This document shows positions 4,392 to 6,828 of a stretch of DNA of 64,000 nucleotides, piece after piece. The notes under the pieces are model-generated. The model saw only the letters and a program-made list of their open reading frames with translations, was not told the origin of the DNA and made no database searches. Source of the stretch: Sminthopsis crassicaudata. Its lineage: Eukaryota. How positions within the stretch are numbered: position 1 is the stretch's first letter; each line of letters starts with the position of its first letter. The stretch lies in the NCBI RefSeq assembly GCF_048593235.1, contig NC_133622.1, forward strand, positions 252,468,055-252,532,054, read 5' to 3'. A program made the translations under genes and the position numbers.

Positions 4392-6828
4392 AGTACGCCT
4401 GGCACTGTCCGGGAGGGCCCGGGAGCTGGGGGATGGGTTCGGGGGGAGGGGCTGCAGGGGGCTCGGGGCCTGACCTCGCTCTCTCCTTCTCTCCTAGTGC
4501 CTCCCTACACCATCACCTACTTCGATGTCCGAGGTAATGCGGGCCTGGGCCGGGAGGGGGCGGGGCAGGGGTCGCTGCAGAGGAGCCCCTCCCCGAGGGA
4601 CGCGGGAGGGAACCGTGGAAGCCCCCTCCCCGGGCTGGGCCTGGGCCCCGGAGGGGAGGTCCCAGGAGGCGGCTGCCGGGGTCCCCGCGGGGCTGCCGGC
4701 CAGGGGCTGACCCCCCCGCCCCCCAGGCCGGTGCGAGCCCATCCGGATGCTCCTGGCGGACCAGGGCCAGACCTGGAGGAAGGAAGTTCTGAACCAACGC
4801 CTGTGCCAGGCGGGGGAAGTGAAGAGCAGCTGTGTGAGTGCCGGGCGGGGGCCGGGGGGGGGGGCGGCAGCGGGGGCCGCGCGCTCAGCCCCCGCCGCTC
4901 TCTGCCCGCAGGACGCCGGCAGGTACCTCAAGCTCACGGACGAAGACTTCAGCGTTTACCAGAGCAGCGCCATCCTGAGATACCTGGGCCGCCAGCTTGG
5001 TAGGCACGGGAGCCTTCCGCCCAGCCTCCTCCCAGCCTCCTCCTAGCCTCCGCCCAGCCTCCTCCCAGCCTCCTCCCAGCCTCCTCCCTGCCTCCGCCCA
5101 GCCTCCGCCCAGCCTCCTCCCAGCCTCCTTCCTCCCTGCCTCCGCCCAGCCTCCTCCCTGCCTCCTCCCTGCCTCCTCCCTGCCTCCGCCCAGCCTCCTC
5201 CCTGCCTCCGCCCAGCCTCCGCCCAGCCTCCTCCCAGCCTCCTCCCTGCCTCCGCCCAGCCTCCGCCCAGCCTCCTCCCAGCCTCTTCCCTGCCTCCGCC
5301 CAGCCTCCTCCCAGCCTCTTCCCTGCCTCCGCCCAGCCTCCGCCCAGCCTCTTCCCTGCCTCCGCCCAGCCTCCTCCCTGCCTCCGCCCAGCCTCCGCCC
5401 AGCCTCCTCCCTGCCTCCGCCCAGCCTCCTCCCTGCCTCCTCCCTGCCTCCCCCCAGCCTCCTCCCTGCCTCCTCCCTGCCTCTGCCAGCCGCCTGGCCA
5501 AGCCTGCTCTCCCCGCACTCCCCCCTCCGCTCTCCCCCCCAAGTCCCCCACTGACACGAGGGGAACATGGGCTCCCAGGGGGCCGAGATGGCTGGAAGGA
5601 GGCGGGAGGAGGGGCTTCCCCGAGGCTGCGACATGGGAGCTGGAGCCTGGGGGAGGGGGCTGAGCAGGGCCCCGGGGTGGGGGATGGGTGGGAAGGACCC
5701 TTTTCCACCTCGCCCCCTGCTCAGGGCTGTACGGGAAGGATGACCGGGAAGCTACACTCTTGGATGTCACCAATGAGGACGTGGAGGACTTGAGGCGCAA
5801 GTACCTGAACTTCATCTACTTCCACTACGTGAGTGACAGGGGGGGGGGCCGGGCAGAGAGCCCGCCCAGGCTCAGGGGCCCCTGGTTCCAGCCCAAGCTG
5901 CCTCCGGTGGTCCTTGTTGCTCCCTGGGGCCCCCAGGCCCTGGGCGGGTGTGGGAGAGCCTTCTCCTGCCTGTCCCATTTGGTTGCGGCCCCTGGGACTT
6001 AGCGTCCTTGACAAGGGTTTTCTCCAGTTCTTCCTCCCAGCAGCTTTAGGAGGTGGGCGCCCCTGTGGGCTCCATTCTACAGTGGGGTAAACTGAGGCTG
6101 GGGGAATCTGTGAGGCAGCAGCCAGACTCAGGTCTTCTCCCTCCCTCCTTGCATGGCCTGTGGAGGAGGCGCAGATCTGCAGGGAGGGCAGGGGTGCCTG
6201 GGCACTCAGGAAGGGGGGAATCTGGGAAGTGAGAAGCAGGGCATGGGCTGGGGCTCCCACTTGTTCCCCTGCGCCCTCGTTTCCTAAGGGAGCTGGGGGG
6301 CCTTGGTTGTGCAGGATCATGGCAAGGAGGAGTATTTGAAGGACCTGGTTAAAGAGCTGAAGCTTTTTGAAGACTTGCTGAGCAAGAACCAAGGAGGCAA
6401 AGCCTTCATTGTGGGGGACCAGGTGAGGCTCTGGGGGAGCAGGGGGGTCTCTGGGGGCACAGAGCCCCGGAGCAACAGGTGGGCCCTCGAGGGGCAGGTG
6501 GGGCTCTGGGAGGGACCCTTGGGATCTAGCTGTCAGACCTGGGACAGCCCAGAGCCCAGACTGTTGCCCCCAGAACAGGGCTGCCCTCCCTCCCCGCTCC
6601 CCTTGGCTGACCTGGCCTGGGGCCCCCTCTCCCTGGCAGATCTCTTTTGTGGATTACAACCTGCTGGACCTGCTGCTGGTCCACAAGACTCTGGCCCCCG
6701 GCTGCCTGGACGCCTTCCCCTTCCTCTTTGCTTATGTGGCCCGGCTCTCCTCCCGACCCAAGCTCAATGTCTACCTGACCTCCCCCCAGCACACTGATCT
6801 CCCCATCAACTGCAATGGCAAACAGTGA
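4392..6828 (+). CDS. GSTP1: Pi-class glutathione S-transferase (GSTP1-like, divergent), 7 exons, 210 aa, intact
   Basis: Coding exons 4392 (A of a split ATG; inferred), 4498-4533, 4727-4833, 4912-4999, 5725-5828, 6315-6422, 6640-6828. Sizes 1/36/107/88/104/108/189 match the human GSTP1 layout, with GT-AG sites. Protein [15 protein letters not shown]…[13 protein letters not shown]…[14 protein letters not shown] at 6853-6858. Whether this is the GSTP1 ortholog or a paralog is unresolved. Confidence 0.93.
5012..5483. repeat. 11-bp minisatellite CCTCC(T/G)CCC(A/T)G in GSTP intron 4 (about 43 units)
   Basis: Direct inspection; it starts about 12 nt after the exon-4 donor. Confidence 0.92.

What the first reader, a model, noticed from the sequence alone, without database searches (positions are those of the whole stretch)
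4727..4999. Intact pi-class GST with a rebuilt glutathione-binding loop (no cis-Pro53, W38C, Q51R)
Seen: the spliced ORF is complete with perfect exon sizes, yet human-numbered residues 35-58 read [24 protein letters not shown] instead of [24 protein letters not shown]. Trp38 is Cys (4804-4806), Gln51 is Arg, Leu52 is Tyr, and the near-invariant thioredoxin-fold cis-Pro53 is Leu (4927-4929). Tyr7, Arg13, Lys44, Gln64, Ser65 and Asp98 are kept. Established: W38, Q51, L52 and cis-P53 form the GSH site in GSTP1. Inference: this is a neofunctionalised or pseudo-enzyme GSTP paralog (ligandin, JNK-binding or redox-sensor role, or a different thiol cofactor), not a decaying gene.
Basis: partly seen in the sequence, partly recalled or inferred. 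Interest (0 to 1): 0.72.

Follow-up and report, generated by a model that had tools for sequence, protein, structure and literature searches.

The report
Fast-evolving dasyurid GSTP paralog
The fat-tailed dunnart carries an intact, transcribed extra copy of the pi-class glutathione transferase gene, shared with other dasyurid marsupials, whose glutathione-holding loop has been rebuilt; it is kept as a coding gene but evolves almost freely, and its function is untested.

Summary
Window 4392-6828 (+) holds a 7-exon, 210-aa pi-class GST gene with W38C, Y49A, Q51R, L52Y and P53L. It is identical to NCBI's 'GSTP-like' protein of Sminthopsis crassicaudata.

- **A paralog, not the GSTP ortholog.** A canonical GSTP (W38, QLP) lies 27 kb upstream. 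NDUFV1 follows downstream.
- **One dasyurid clade.** Antechinus (2 copies) and Tasmanian devil (2 copies plus a fragment) carry the same paralog. All five copies share W38C, Q51R/K, L52Y and G205C. Leu53 (CTC) occurs in dunnart and devil; Antechinus keeps Pro. In 67 other vertebrate GSTPs these loop residues are invariant, apart from one Ala at 53.
- **Selection is relaxed.** Omega is 0.80 in the clade against 0.10 in canonical GSTP, and omega = 1 is not rejected.
- **Not free decay either.** All five reading frames and all splice sites are intact, whereas the introns carry 18-28 indels per kb. A third of codons are constrained.
- **It is transcribed.** Spliced RNA contigs from two studies carry exon 4; one matches it letter for letter, Leu53 included.
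- **Structure.** AlphaFold gives a GSTP1 fold (TM 0.95) with low confidence only in the rebuilt segment.

The specific roles proposed are untested.

The parts
4392..4392 (+). Last base of exon 1: the A of the split A|TG start codon, followed by a GT donor. The transcription start was not determined.
   Evidence: The NCBI CDS start at L001:10001 maps to window 4392. Sequence read.
4498..4533 (+). Exon 2 (TG of the start codon, residues 1-12, first base of Gly12 codon). Holds Tyr7, Phe8 and Asp9 (Pro in canonical GSTP).
   Evidence: AG/GT borders and translation.
4727..4833 (+). Exon 3 (residues 13-47). Holds Arg13, Cys38 (TGC 4804-4806, Trp in canonical), Lys44 and Cys47.
   Evidence: Spliced RNA contigs end this exon at 4833.
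4834..4911 (+). Intron 3: 78 nt, in frame, without a stop codon. It is removed in the RNA contigs.
   Evidence: Joint 4833>4912 in runs X5 and X6.
4912..4999 (+). Exon 4 (residues 48-76, first base of Gly77 codon). Holds Ala49 (4915-4917), Arg51 (4921-4923), Tyr52 (4924-4926), Leu53 (4927-4929), Gln64 and Ser65.
   Evidence: The X6 RNA contig and the X1 DNA contig show 0 differences here.
5011..5495 (+). Tandem array of an 11-nt unit (about 44 copies) inside intron 4.
5725..5828 (+). Exon 5 (residues 77-111). Holds Glu94, Asp95, Asp98, Arg101 and Tyr108.
   Evidence: Joints 4998>5724 and 5828>6315.
6315..6422 (+). Exon 6 (residues 112-147). Holds Leu128 (Pro in canonical).
6640..6828 (+). Exon 7 (residues 148-209 plus TGA). 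Holds Cys205 (6811-6813, Gly in canonical).
   Evidence: 100% identity to P0001.
6853..6858 (+). AATAAA polyadenylation signal, 25 nt after the stop codon.
   Evidence: Sequence read.

Best explanation
This is a real, transcribed, protein-coding tandem paralog of GSTP (NCBI XP_074129918.1, 'GSTP-like') in Sminthopsis crassicaudata. It lies between the canonical GSTP, 27 kb upstream, and NDUFV1. It belongs to a dasyurid-lineage clade of GSTP-like genes, with two copies in Antechinus flavipes and two plus a fragment in Sarcophilus harrisii. The clade arose by tandem duplication and now evolves about eight times faster at the protein level than canonical GSTP. On the stem of the clade the alpha2-beta3 segment was rebuilt. 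In GSTP1 this segment binds the glycine end and the cysteinyl backbone of glutathione and carries the Tyr49 dimer 'key'. Fixed changes there are V33L, W38C, M39Q, K40A, D42E, A45S, L52Y and F55L, with Q51 becoming R or K. Residues on helix 4 and the C-terminus changed too (D94E, G95D, L101R, R105N, G205C, P128L/F). Residues 48-51 and 53 still vary: Pro53 is Leu in dunnart and devil and Pro in Antechinus. Shown: the gene structure, paralogy, clade membership, rates, ORF preservation, transcription and splicing. Inferred: the protein keeps the GST fold, Tyr7 and the gamma-glutamyl contacts (Gln64, Ser65, Asp98). It no longer binds glutathione or locks its dimer in the canonical way. It therefore acts as a low-affinity or changed-specificity transferase, or as a non-catalytic binding protein, under weak selection that protects the reading frame and about a third of the residues.
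For: The exon structure and ORF are intact and the protein is identical to P0001. The canonical paralog P0168 is on the same chromosome, 27 kb upstream. NDUFV1 is downstream by synteny. The clade has 100/100 support and sits beside dasyurid canonical GSTP and bilby. Shared substitutions are listed, and 7 of 14 fixed shifts fall in residues 35-58 (p = 2e-4). The replaced residues are invariant in 67 other vertebrate GSTPs. Omega is 0.10 canonical, 0.68 on the stem and 0.80 in the clade (2dlnL = 74.5 against one ratio). The site model M1a beats M0, with 33% of codons at omega near 0. Introns carry 18-28 gap events per kb, against 0-1 in-frame gap in 630 nt of CDS. P(all five ORFs intact | neutral substitutions) = 0.001. 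Spliced contigs occur in runs from two studies. The AF2 model matches human GSTP1 at TM 0.95. Its pLDDT is 78/54/86 over residues 31-60, against 94/92/93 in the canonical control. Pfam GST_N scores 16.3 bits, below the 20.9 cut-off, against 31.0 for the canonical copy. [quoted passage not shown] It places Trp38, Lys44 and Gln51 on the glycine carboxylate of GSH (PMC13269400) and describes Tyr50 (Met = 1 numbering) as the conserved dimer key (PMC8071248).
Against: Omega = 1 is not rejected for the clade (p = 0.27) or for stem plus clade (p = 0.16). Retention of Tyr7, Lys44, Gln64, Ser65 and Asp98 (5 of 8 G-site residues) is no better than the 49% of sites unchanged overall. The omega-0 site class could partly reflect mutation-rate variation in a CpG-rich gene, which the model does not separate. 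Neutral drift on the dunnart terminal branch alone would leave the ORF free of stops with probability 0.19, so a recent loss of function in this species is excluded mainly by the indel argument. The contig depths hint at much lower abundance than canonical GSTP (10.7 against 428 in run X5); the tool warns that depth is a poor measure. Contigs of study P2 (X5, X8) show two unlisted differences in exon 4. The low pLDDT may only reflect an alignment dominated by canonical sequences. No biochemical data exist.
Confidence: 0.68

Rival explanations
1. The gene is a redundant duplicate drifting towards pseudogenisation. It is still transcribed from an inherited CpG-island promoter but no longer has a selected function, and its open frame has survived by chance.
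For: Clade omega is 0.80 and not distinguishable from 1. Pairwise dN/dS is 0.6-1.4 in both domains. Positions invariant in all other GSTPs now vary within the clade (48-51 and 53). The dunnart N-terminal domain falls below Pfam's GST_N cut-off. The contig depth is low next to canonical GSTP.
Against: Five of five copies in three genera keep a 209-210 codon frame, the start codon and all 12 splice sites. The neighbouring introns show 18-28 gap events per kb, mostly not multiples of three, against one 3-nt gap in any CDS. Neutral simulation gives P = 0.001 for five stop-free ORFs. The mixture of neutral and constrained sites (M1a) fits better than one omega fitted to all sites (0.79; 2dlnL = 12.9).
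Confidence: 0.17
2. The protein is a fully competent glutathione transferase with a compensated G-site. Arg/Lys51 would replace the Trp38 and Gln51 hydrogen bonds to the glycine carboxylate of GSH, and the 52-53 backbone would still present its NH and C=O groups. The paralogs would differ from GSTP mainly in electrophile (H-site) specificity, and fast evolution would reflect xenobiotic adaptation.
For: Tyr7, Arg13, Lys44, Gln64, Ser65, Asp98 and Tyr108 are kept in all five copies. Position 51 is always basic (R or K). Fixed changes cluster at H-site positions 101, 105 and 205. M2a beats M1a at p = 0.014, resting on a single site, codon 114. The overall fold is predicted with high confidence.
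Against: The cis-Pro is described as essential for GSH binding and universally conserved in active cytosolic GSTs (PMC10452860), and it is Leu here. The Tyr49 key is lost (PMC8071248). Trp38 is invariant in 67 of 67 other GSTPs. The positive-selection signal rests on one codon.
Confidence: 0.15
3. The divergent loop is an assembly or annotation artefact.
For: The region is very GC-rich (72%), with homopolymer G runs and a tandem array nearby.
Against: DNA contigs of run X1 and a spliced RNA contig of run X6 reproduce exon 4 without a difference, and X1 also covers codon 38. The same CTC codon and the same clade-wide substitutions occur in independently assembled devil and Antechinus genomes.
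Confidence: 0.02

Closest known systems
Canonical pi-class GST (human GSTP1-1; the dunnart's own GSTP, XP_074132905.1 = P0168)
   Same: It has the same 7-exon structure with identical exon sizes and phases and the split A|TG start. It is 210 aa, 72% identical to the dunnart canonical copy and 63% to human. The predicted fold matches PDB 13gs at TM 0.95. Tyr7, Arg13, Lys44, Gln64, Ser65, Asp98 and the Cys47-Lys54 pair are kept. It lies in the same chromosomal neighbourhood next to NDUFV1.
   Different: Trp38, Tyr49, Gln51, Leu52 and cis-Pro53 are replaced, as are Gly95, Pro128 and Gly205. Omega is 0.8 instead of 0.1. The Pfam GST_N score is below the cut-off.
GSTP-like paralogs of Antechinus flavipes (XP_051819984/5) and Sarcophilus harrisii (KAM8970911/2)
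   Same: They belong to the same clade (100/100 support). They share W38C, Q51R/K, L52Y, F55L, G95D, L101R and G205C, the same tandem position between canonical GSTP and NDUFV1, and intact ORFs.
   Different: Antechinus keeps Pro53, and one of its copies keeps Tyr49. The devil has Lys51. Residues 48-50 differ in every species. The dunnart copy is the only one below the GST_N cut-off.
Catalytically degenerate GST-fold proteins (GDAP1, GSTCD, CLICs; cephalopod S-crystallins from my own knowledge)
   Same: They have a GST fold with a G-site that no longer matches the GSH-binding consensus. In GDAP1 crystal structures the equivalent proline is trans and GSH is not bound (PMC10452860).
   Different: Those are old, distinct families with clear purifying selection. 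This is a young, lineage-restricted offshoot of an active class. It is still 72% identical to its parent and evolves almost neutrally.
Rodent extra GSTP genes (mouse Gstp2, Gstp3; from my own knowledge, not tested here)
   Same: They are tandem lineage-specific GSTP duplicates, of which at least one has much lower activity because of a few active-site substitutions.
   Different: As far as I recall they keep Trp38, Gln51 and the cis-Pro. No comparison was run here.

Membership tests
Pi-class cytosolic GST (GSTP) | Best sequence and fold match to GSTP1, over the full length | tested here: met
   Exon-wise phmmer hits are all GSTP chains. Foldseek's top 41 hits are GSTP1 structures, at TM 0.94-0.95. 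It groups with marsupial GSTPs in the tree.
Pi-class cytosolic GST (GSTP) | Conserved GSTP gene structure (7 exons, same phases, A|TG split) and locus next to NDUFV1 | tested here: met
   Exon sizes are identical to nine other marsupial GSTP genes except for one 3-nt deletion in an Antechinus copy. Synteny with the Antechinus locus, which holds a Complex1_51K gene.
Pi-class cytosolic GST (GSTP) | GST_C and GST_N Pfam domains above the gathering score | tested here: inconclusive
   GST_C_3 scores 64.7 bits and GST_C 57.4 bits, both passing. GST_N aligns over residues 5-74 but scores 16.3 bits, below the 20.9 cut-off. The canonical copy scores 31.0.
Catalytically active cytosolic GST | Catalytic Tyr7 and gamma-glutamyl contacts (Gln64, Ser65, Asp98) | tested here: met
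   Present in all five clade members.
Catalytically active cytosolic GST | [quoted passage not shown] | tested here: not met
   CTC Leu at 4927-4929, confirmed in DNA and RNA contigs. It is Pro in 66 of 67 other GSTPs.
Catalytically active cytosolic GST | Glycine-carboxylate contacts Trp38, Lys44 and Gln51 (PMC13269400) | tested here: not met
   Cys38 and Arg51; only Lys44 is kept.
Dimeric alpha/mu/pi GST | Aromatic 'key' residue (Tyr49; Tyr50 with Met = 1) fitting the neighbour's lock (PMC8071248) | tested here: not met
   Ala49 (GCC 4915-4917). Gly95 and Pro128, which I recall as lock residues, are Asp and Leu. The oligomeric state itself cannot be tested here.
Catalytically active cytosolic GST | Measured GSH binding and conjugating activity | not testable with these tools
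   Needs recombinant protein.
Processed or decaying pseudogene | Frame disruptions, loss of introns or splice sites, no transcription | tested here: not met
   The frame is intact, introns are present, all borders are AG/GT and spliced transcripts exist.

The most novel reading that the evidence does not exclude
Dasyurid marsupials have evolved a private family of GSTP-derived proteins in which the glutathione-binding loop, its universally conserved cis-proline and the lock-and-key dimer motif have been dismantled while the fold and reading frame are kept. That would make it a young pseudo-enzyme or ligand-binding protein caught early in the transition from enzyme to a new role, possibly monomeric or using another small-molecule partner.
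Probability: 0.3. Interest if true: 0.65.

Novelty: new variant of a known kind. Interest (0 to 1): 0.45.

Why it matters
The cis-proline and Trp38/Gln51 contacts are textbook invariants of cytosolic GSTs. Here is a natural series of young paralogs with and without the proline (Antechinus against dunnart and devil). The paralogs sit next to an unchanged parent gene in the same genomes. That gives a ready-made set of natural variants for asking three things: what the cis-Pro and the Tyr49 key contribute to GSH binding and dimerisation; how an enzyme fold is released from catalytic constraint; and whether such copies gain binding or signalling roles. It also warns annotators that 'GSTP-like' in dasyurids should not be read as a working GSTP.

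Tried and rejected
- **Other GSTP copies in the window:** none. None either in the 10-kb flanks of the dunnart loci. About 7.2 kb between the two dunnart loci was not seen.
- **Earlier notes of this scan:** nothing by place or by words.
- **Sole GSTP of the species:** rejected, because P0168 exists.
- **An ancient marsupial-wide paralog:** not supported. The odd wombat protein P0022 (also Cys at 38) groups with wombat canonical GSTP. Its gene could not be fetched.
- **Positive selection as the main driver:** weak. M2a against M1a gives p = 0.014 from one codon. The Antechinus A/B pair has 23 nonsynonymous against 3 synonymous differences, but the binomial p is 0.13.
- **Special retention of catalytic residues:** rejected as evidence, since 5 of 8 is no better than background.
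- **History of Leu53:** unresolved. One loss with reversion or gene conversion in Antechinus, two parallel C>T losses, and sorting of old paralogs are all possible. The N- and C-terminal trees root the clade differently, which suggests gene conversion.
- **Literature on marsupial GSTP paralogs:** none found.
- **Pfam on the 3.5-kb insertion after the gene:** no hits.
- **IQ-TREE codon run:** the report section I printed (and my line filter before it) showed no omega value, so I wrote my own codon likelihood.
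Full report
**Observation**

On the + strand the window holds a complete pi-class GST gene. The last base of exon 1 (4392) is the A of a split A|TG start codon. The coding exons are 4498-4533, 4727-4833, 4912-4999, 5725-5828, 6315-6422 and 6640-6828. All have AG/GT borders, a TGA stop follows, and an AATAAA lies 25 nt later. The joined frame gives 210 residues.

Exon-wise searches against solved structures align exon 3 to human GSTP1 residues 13-47 and exon 4 to residues 50-76, with GRYLK opposite GQLPK.

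- TGC at 4804-4806 (Cys for Trp38)
- AGG at 4921-4923 (Arg for Gln51)
- TAC at 4924-4926 (Tyr for Leu52)
- CTC at 4927-4929 (Leu for Pro53)

Tyr7, Arg13, Lys44, Gln64, Ser65 and Asp98 are kept.

**Identity and context**

I queried an open frame ending in exon 7, given by reference and scored on the exon part only. It returned a 210-aa NCBI protein, 'glutathione S-transferase P-like [Sminthopsis crassicaudata]' (P0001, XP_074129918.1), which is identical to the spliced model.

The gene lies at about 252.47 Mb of chromosome CM109186.1. A canonical GSTP with Trp38 and QLP (P0168, XP_074132905.1) lies 27 kb upstream on the same strand. Alignment with the Antechinus locus, where a Complex1_51K gene (NDUFV1) follows, places NDUFV1 from about 22.2 kb of the window. 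The window holds no second GSTP copy. The gene is therefore a tandem paralog, not the GSTP ortholog.

**The clade**

The same kind of gene exists in two other dasyurids:

- Antechinus flavipes has two copies (P0002, P0003).
- Sarcophilus harrisii has two full copies (the cores of P0036 and P0037) plus an exon 6-7 fragment.

In both species the copies lie between the canonical GSTP and NDUFV1. I mapped every protein back onto its locus. All eight dasyurid genes, plus those of bilby and Dromiciops, have the same exon sizes and canonical splice sites.

The five divergent copies form a clade with 100/100 support. It sits beside dasyurid canonical GSTP and bilby, which fits a duplication in the dasyuromorph lineage.

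All five copies share W38C, M39Q, K40A, D42E, A45S, L52Y, F55L, V33L, D94E, G95D, L101R, R105N, F192Y and G205C. Gln51 is Arg or Lys in every copy, and Pro128 is Leu or Phe. Seven of the 14 fixed shifts lie in the 24 residues 35-58 (hypergeometric p = 2e-4).

Position 53 is Leu (the same CTC codon) in the dunnart and both devil copies, and Pro (CCC) in both Antechinus copies. Residues 48-50 differ in every species. Tyr49 survives only in one Antechinus copy.

In 67 other vertebrate GSTPs, from fish to mammals, W38, G50, Q51 and L52 are invariant and P53 is Pro in 66.

**Selection**

Pairwise dN/dS is 0.10-0.16 among canonical genes and 0.6-1.4 (2.3 for the Antechinus A/B pair) within the divergent clade, in both domains. 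I wrote a branch codon model (GY-type, F3x4). It gives:

| Branch class | Omega |
|---|---|
| Canonical branches | 0.10 |
| Stem of the divergent clade | 0.68 |
| Within the divergent clade | 0.80 |

- Against a single ratio, 2dlnL is 74.5.
- Omega = 1 is not rejected for the clade (p = 0.27).

Mean constraint is therefore nearly gone, which goes against a strong 'conserved new function' reading.

Three results nevertheless argue against free decay:

- **Site heterogeneity.** Within the clade, a mixture of constrained and neutral sites fits better than one omega (2dlnL = 12.9). It puts 33% of codons at omega near 0. In canonical GSTP the constrained class is 87%.
- **Indels.** The introns of these same genes differ by 18-28 gap events per aligned kb between the dunnart copy and each other copy, mostly not multiples of three. 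The 630-nt CDSs differ by at most one 3-nt gap.
- **Stop codons.** Neutral substitution along the fitted clade tree leaves all five ORFs stop-free in only 0.1% of simulations. For the dunnart terminal branch alone the figure is 19%.

Positive selection is only hinted at: M2a against M1a gives p = 0.014, from one codon. The kept catalytic residues (5 of 8 G-site residues) are retained no better than the 49% of all sites that are unchanged. Their presence is therefore not evidence of activity.

**Expression and sequence support**

- Contigs of runs X5, X6 and X8, from two studies, join 4833 to 4912, 4998/9 to 5724/5 and 5828 to 6315 with GT..AG ends. These are exactly the predicted introns.
- The 378-nt X6 contig spans exons 3-6 with no difference, including the Leu53 codon.
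- A DNA contig of X1 covers 4748-5074 without a difference.
- The P2 contigs (X5, X8) carry two differences in exon 4 that the tool did not list, so I cannot say where they lie.
- No RNA contig covered exons 2 or 7.
- In X5 a contig whose loose end reads as the canonical GSTP has depth 428, against 10.7 for the paralog. This is only a rough hint of lower abundance.

**Structure**

With a 72-sequence alignment, AlphaFold2 models P0001 at mean pLDDT 91.6. The best PDB match is human GSTP1 (13gs, TM 0.95). Confidence falls only in the rebuilt segment:

| Residues | Paralog P0001 | Canonical P0168 (same alignment) |
|---|---|---|
| 31-40 | 78 | 94 |
| 41-50 | 54 | 92 |
| 51-60 | 86 | 93 |

. The rmsd to GSTP1 structures drops from 2.1 to 1.2-1.5 A for apo entries in which about 15 residues are unresolved. 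From my own knowledge these are the helix-2 region. Pfam GST_N scores 16.3 bits for the dunnart paralog, below the 20.9 cut-off. The canonical copy scores 31.0 and the other clade members 27-31.

**Mechanism (inferred)**

The literature bears on the replaced residues in three ways:

- PMC13269400 places Trp38, Lys44 and Gln51 on the glycine carboxylate of GSH, and the Leu52 main chain next to the bound ligand.
- PMC8071248 describes Tyr50 (Met = 1 numbering) as the conserved aromatic key that enters a lock cavity of the neighbouring subunit.

All of these except Lys44 are replaced here. Gly95 and Pro128 are replaced too; I recall them as lock residues, from my own knowledge, and did not check this.

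The most likely state is a protein with a GST fold that keeps the catalytic Tyr and the gamma-glutamyl site but has lost the canonical way of holding GSH and of locking the dimer. It may work as a poor or re-specified transferase, or as a binding protein. These data cannot decide between those. A basic residue at 51 in every copy leaves room for a compensated G-site.

**Comparison and novelty**

- The gene is annotated as 'GSTP-like', but I found no paper on marsupial GSTP paralogs.
- It passes the membership tests for the pi-class fold, gene structure and locus.
- It fails those for an active cytosolic GST (cis-Pro, Trp38/Gln51) and for the lock-and-key dimer.
- It resembles known degenerate GST-fold proteins in principle, but it is young, lineage-restricted and nearly neutral in rate.
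- I rate it a new variant of a known kind, of moderate interest.

- Only five clade sequences from three species were available.
- Gene conversion among the tandem copies is likely: the N- and C-terminal trees root the clade differently. This blurs orthology and the history of Leu53.
- The codon models ignore synonymous-rate variation.
- I did not send the joined spliced model as letters to any search tool. Database searches used exon or open-frame references and afterwards the database's own identical record, P0001.
- I built the joined model only inside scripts from the window file, for translation and for a scan of the window itself.
- Two Logan-derived hits that look primate or human-like (P0012, P0094) were only displayed and not pursued.
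- A human GSTP1 protein returned by the search (P0049) served as one reference row in the alignments and the tree.
- The large representative-protein search was not needed.

Noticed in passing
window 5011-5495: A tandem array of about 44 copies of an 11-nt unit (AGCCTCCTCCC) fills most of intron 4. The devil paralogs have introns of similar length (742-744 nt), while the Antechinus introns are shorter (303-574 nt).
   Followed up: partly
window 4834-4911: Intron 3 is 78 nt, in frame and without a stop, so retaining it would insert 26 residues between Cys47 and residue 48. The RNA contigs seen have it spliced out.
   Followed up: partly
window 2676-3715 and 12481-13600 (also 3709-3893 and 15489-15683): The region upstream of the gene is duplicated about 9.8 kb downstream at 91-94% identity (86% for the second pair), next to an N gap, with no GSTP exons after it. 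This may be the relic of a second divergent copy like those of Antechinus and devil.
   Followed up: partly
window ~6970-10533: About 3.5 kb is present here but absent from the orthologous Antechinus and devil intervals. By eye, one frame around 7390-7800 resembles a retroviral polymerase remnant with stops, but six pieces gave no Pfam hit. I only observed it.
   Followed up: partly
window ~22170 onward (+): The NDUFV1 ortholog starts here, judged by alignment to the Antechinus locus, whose called gene carries Complex1_51K, SLBB_2 and NADH_4Fe-4S. The GC-rich blocks at 22-34 kb and 42-56 kb probably hold this and further genes.
   Followed up: partly
L003:10001-11466 (Sarcophilus): A truncated third divergent copy (exon 6-7-like, with the clade's Cys205) lies 9 kb upstream of the full copy. 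The submitter's gene model P0036 fuses the two into a 351-aa protein. P0037 likewise carries dubious extra N-terminal exons.
   Followed up: partly
L002:~20056-20170 (Sarcophilus): An exon-2-plus-flank fragment, 90.6% identical to window 4421-4536, lies 5.2 kb downstream of the devil copy P0037. A copy of the upstream region follows it, which suggests more array remnants.
   Followed up: no
Proteins P0022 (wombat), P0034 (opossum), P0120 (tenrec): Other GSTP-like proteins also have deviant loops. The wombat protein has Cys at 38, a 3-residue deletion and QFP. The opossum fragment has His at 53. The tenrec protein has Ala at 53. The wombat protein groups with wombat canonical GSTP, so loop remodelling in GSTP duplicates may recur independently.
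   Followed up: partly
Antechinus P0002 against P0003 (L005, L006): The two Antechinus paralogs differ by 23 nonsynonymous and 3 synonymous changes (dN/dS 2.3; intron divergence 0.022). This suggests diversifying selection after a very recent duplication or conversion, but it is not significant (p = 0.13).
   Followed up: partly
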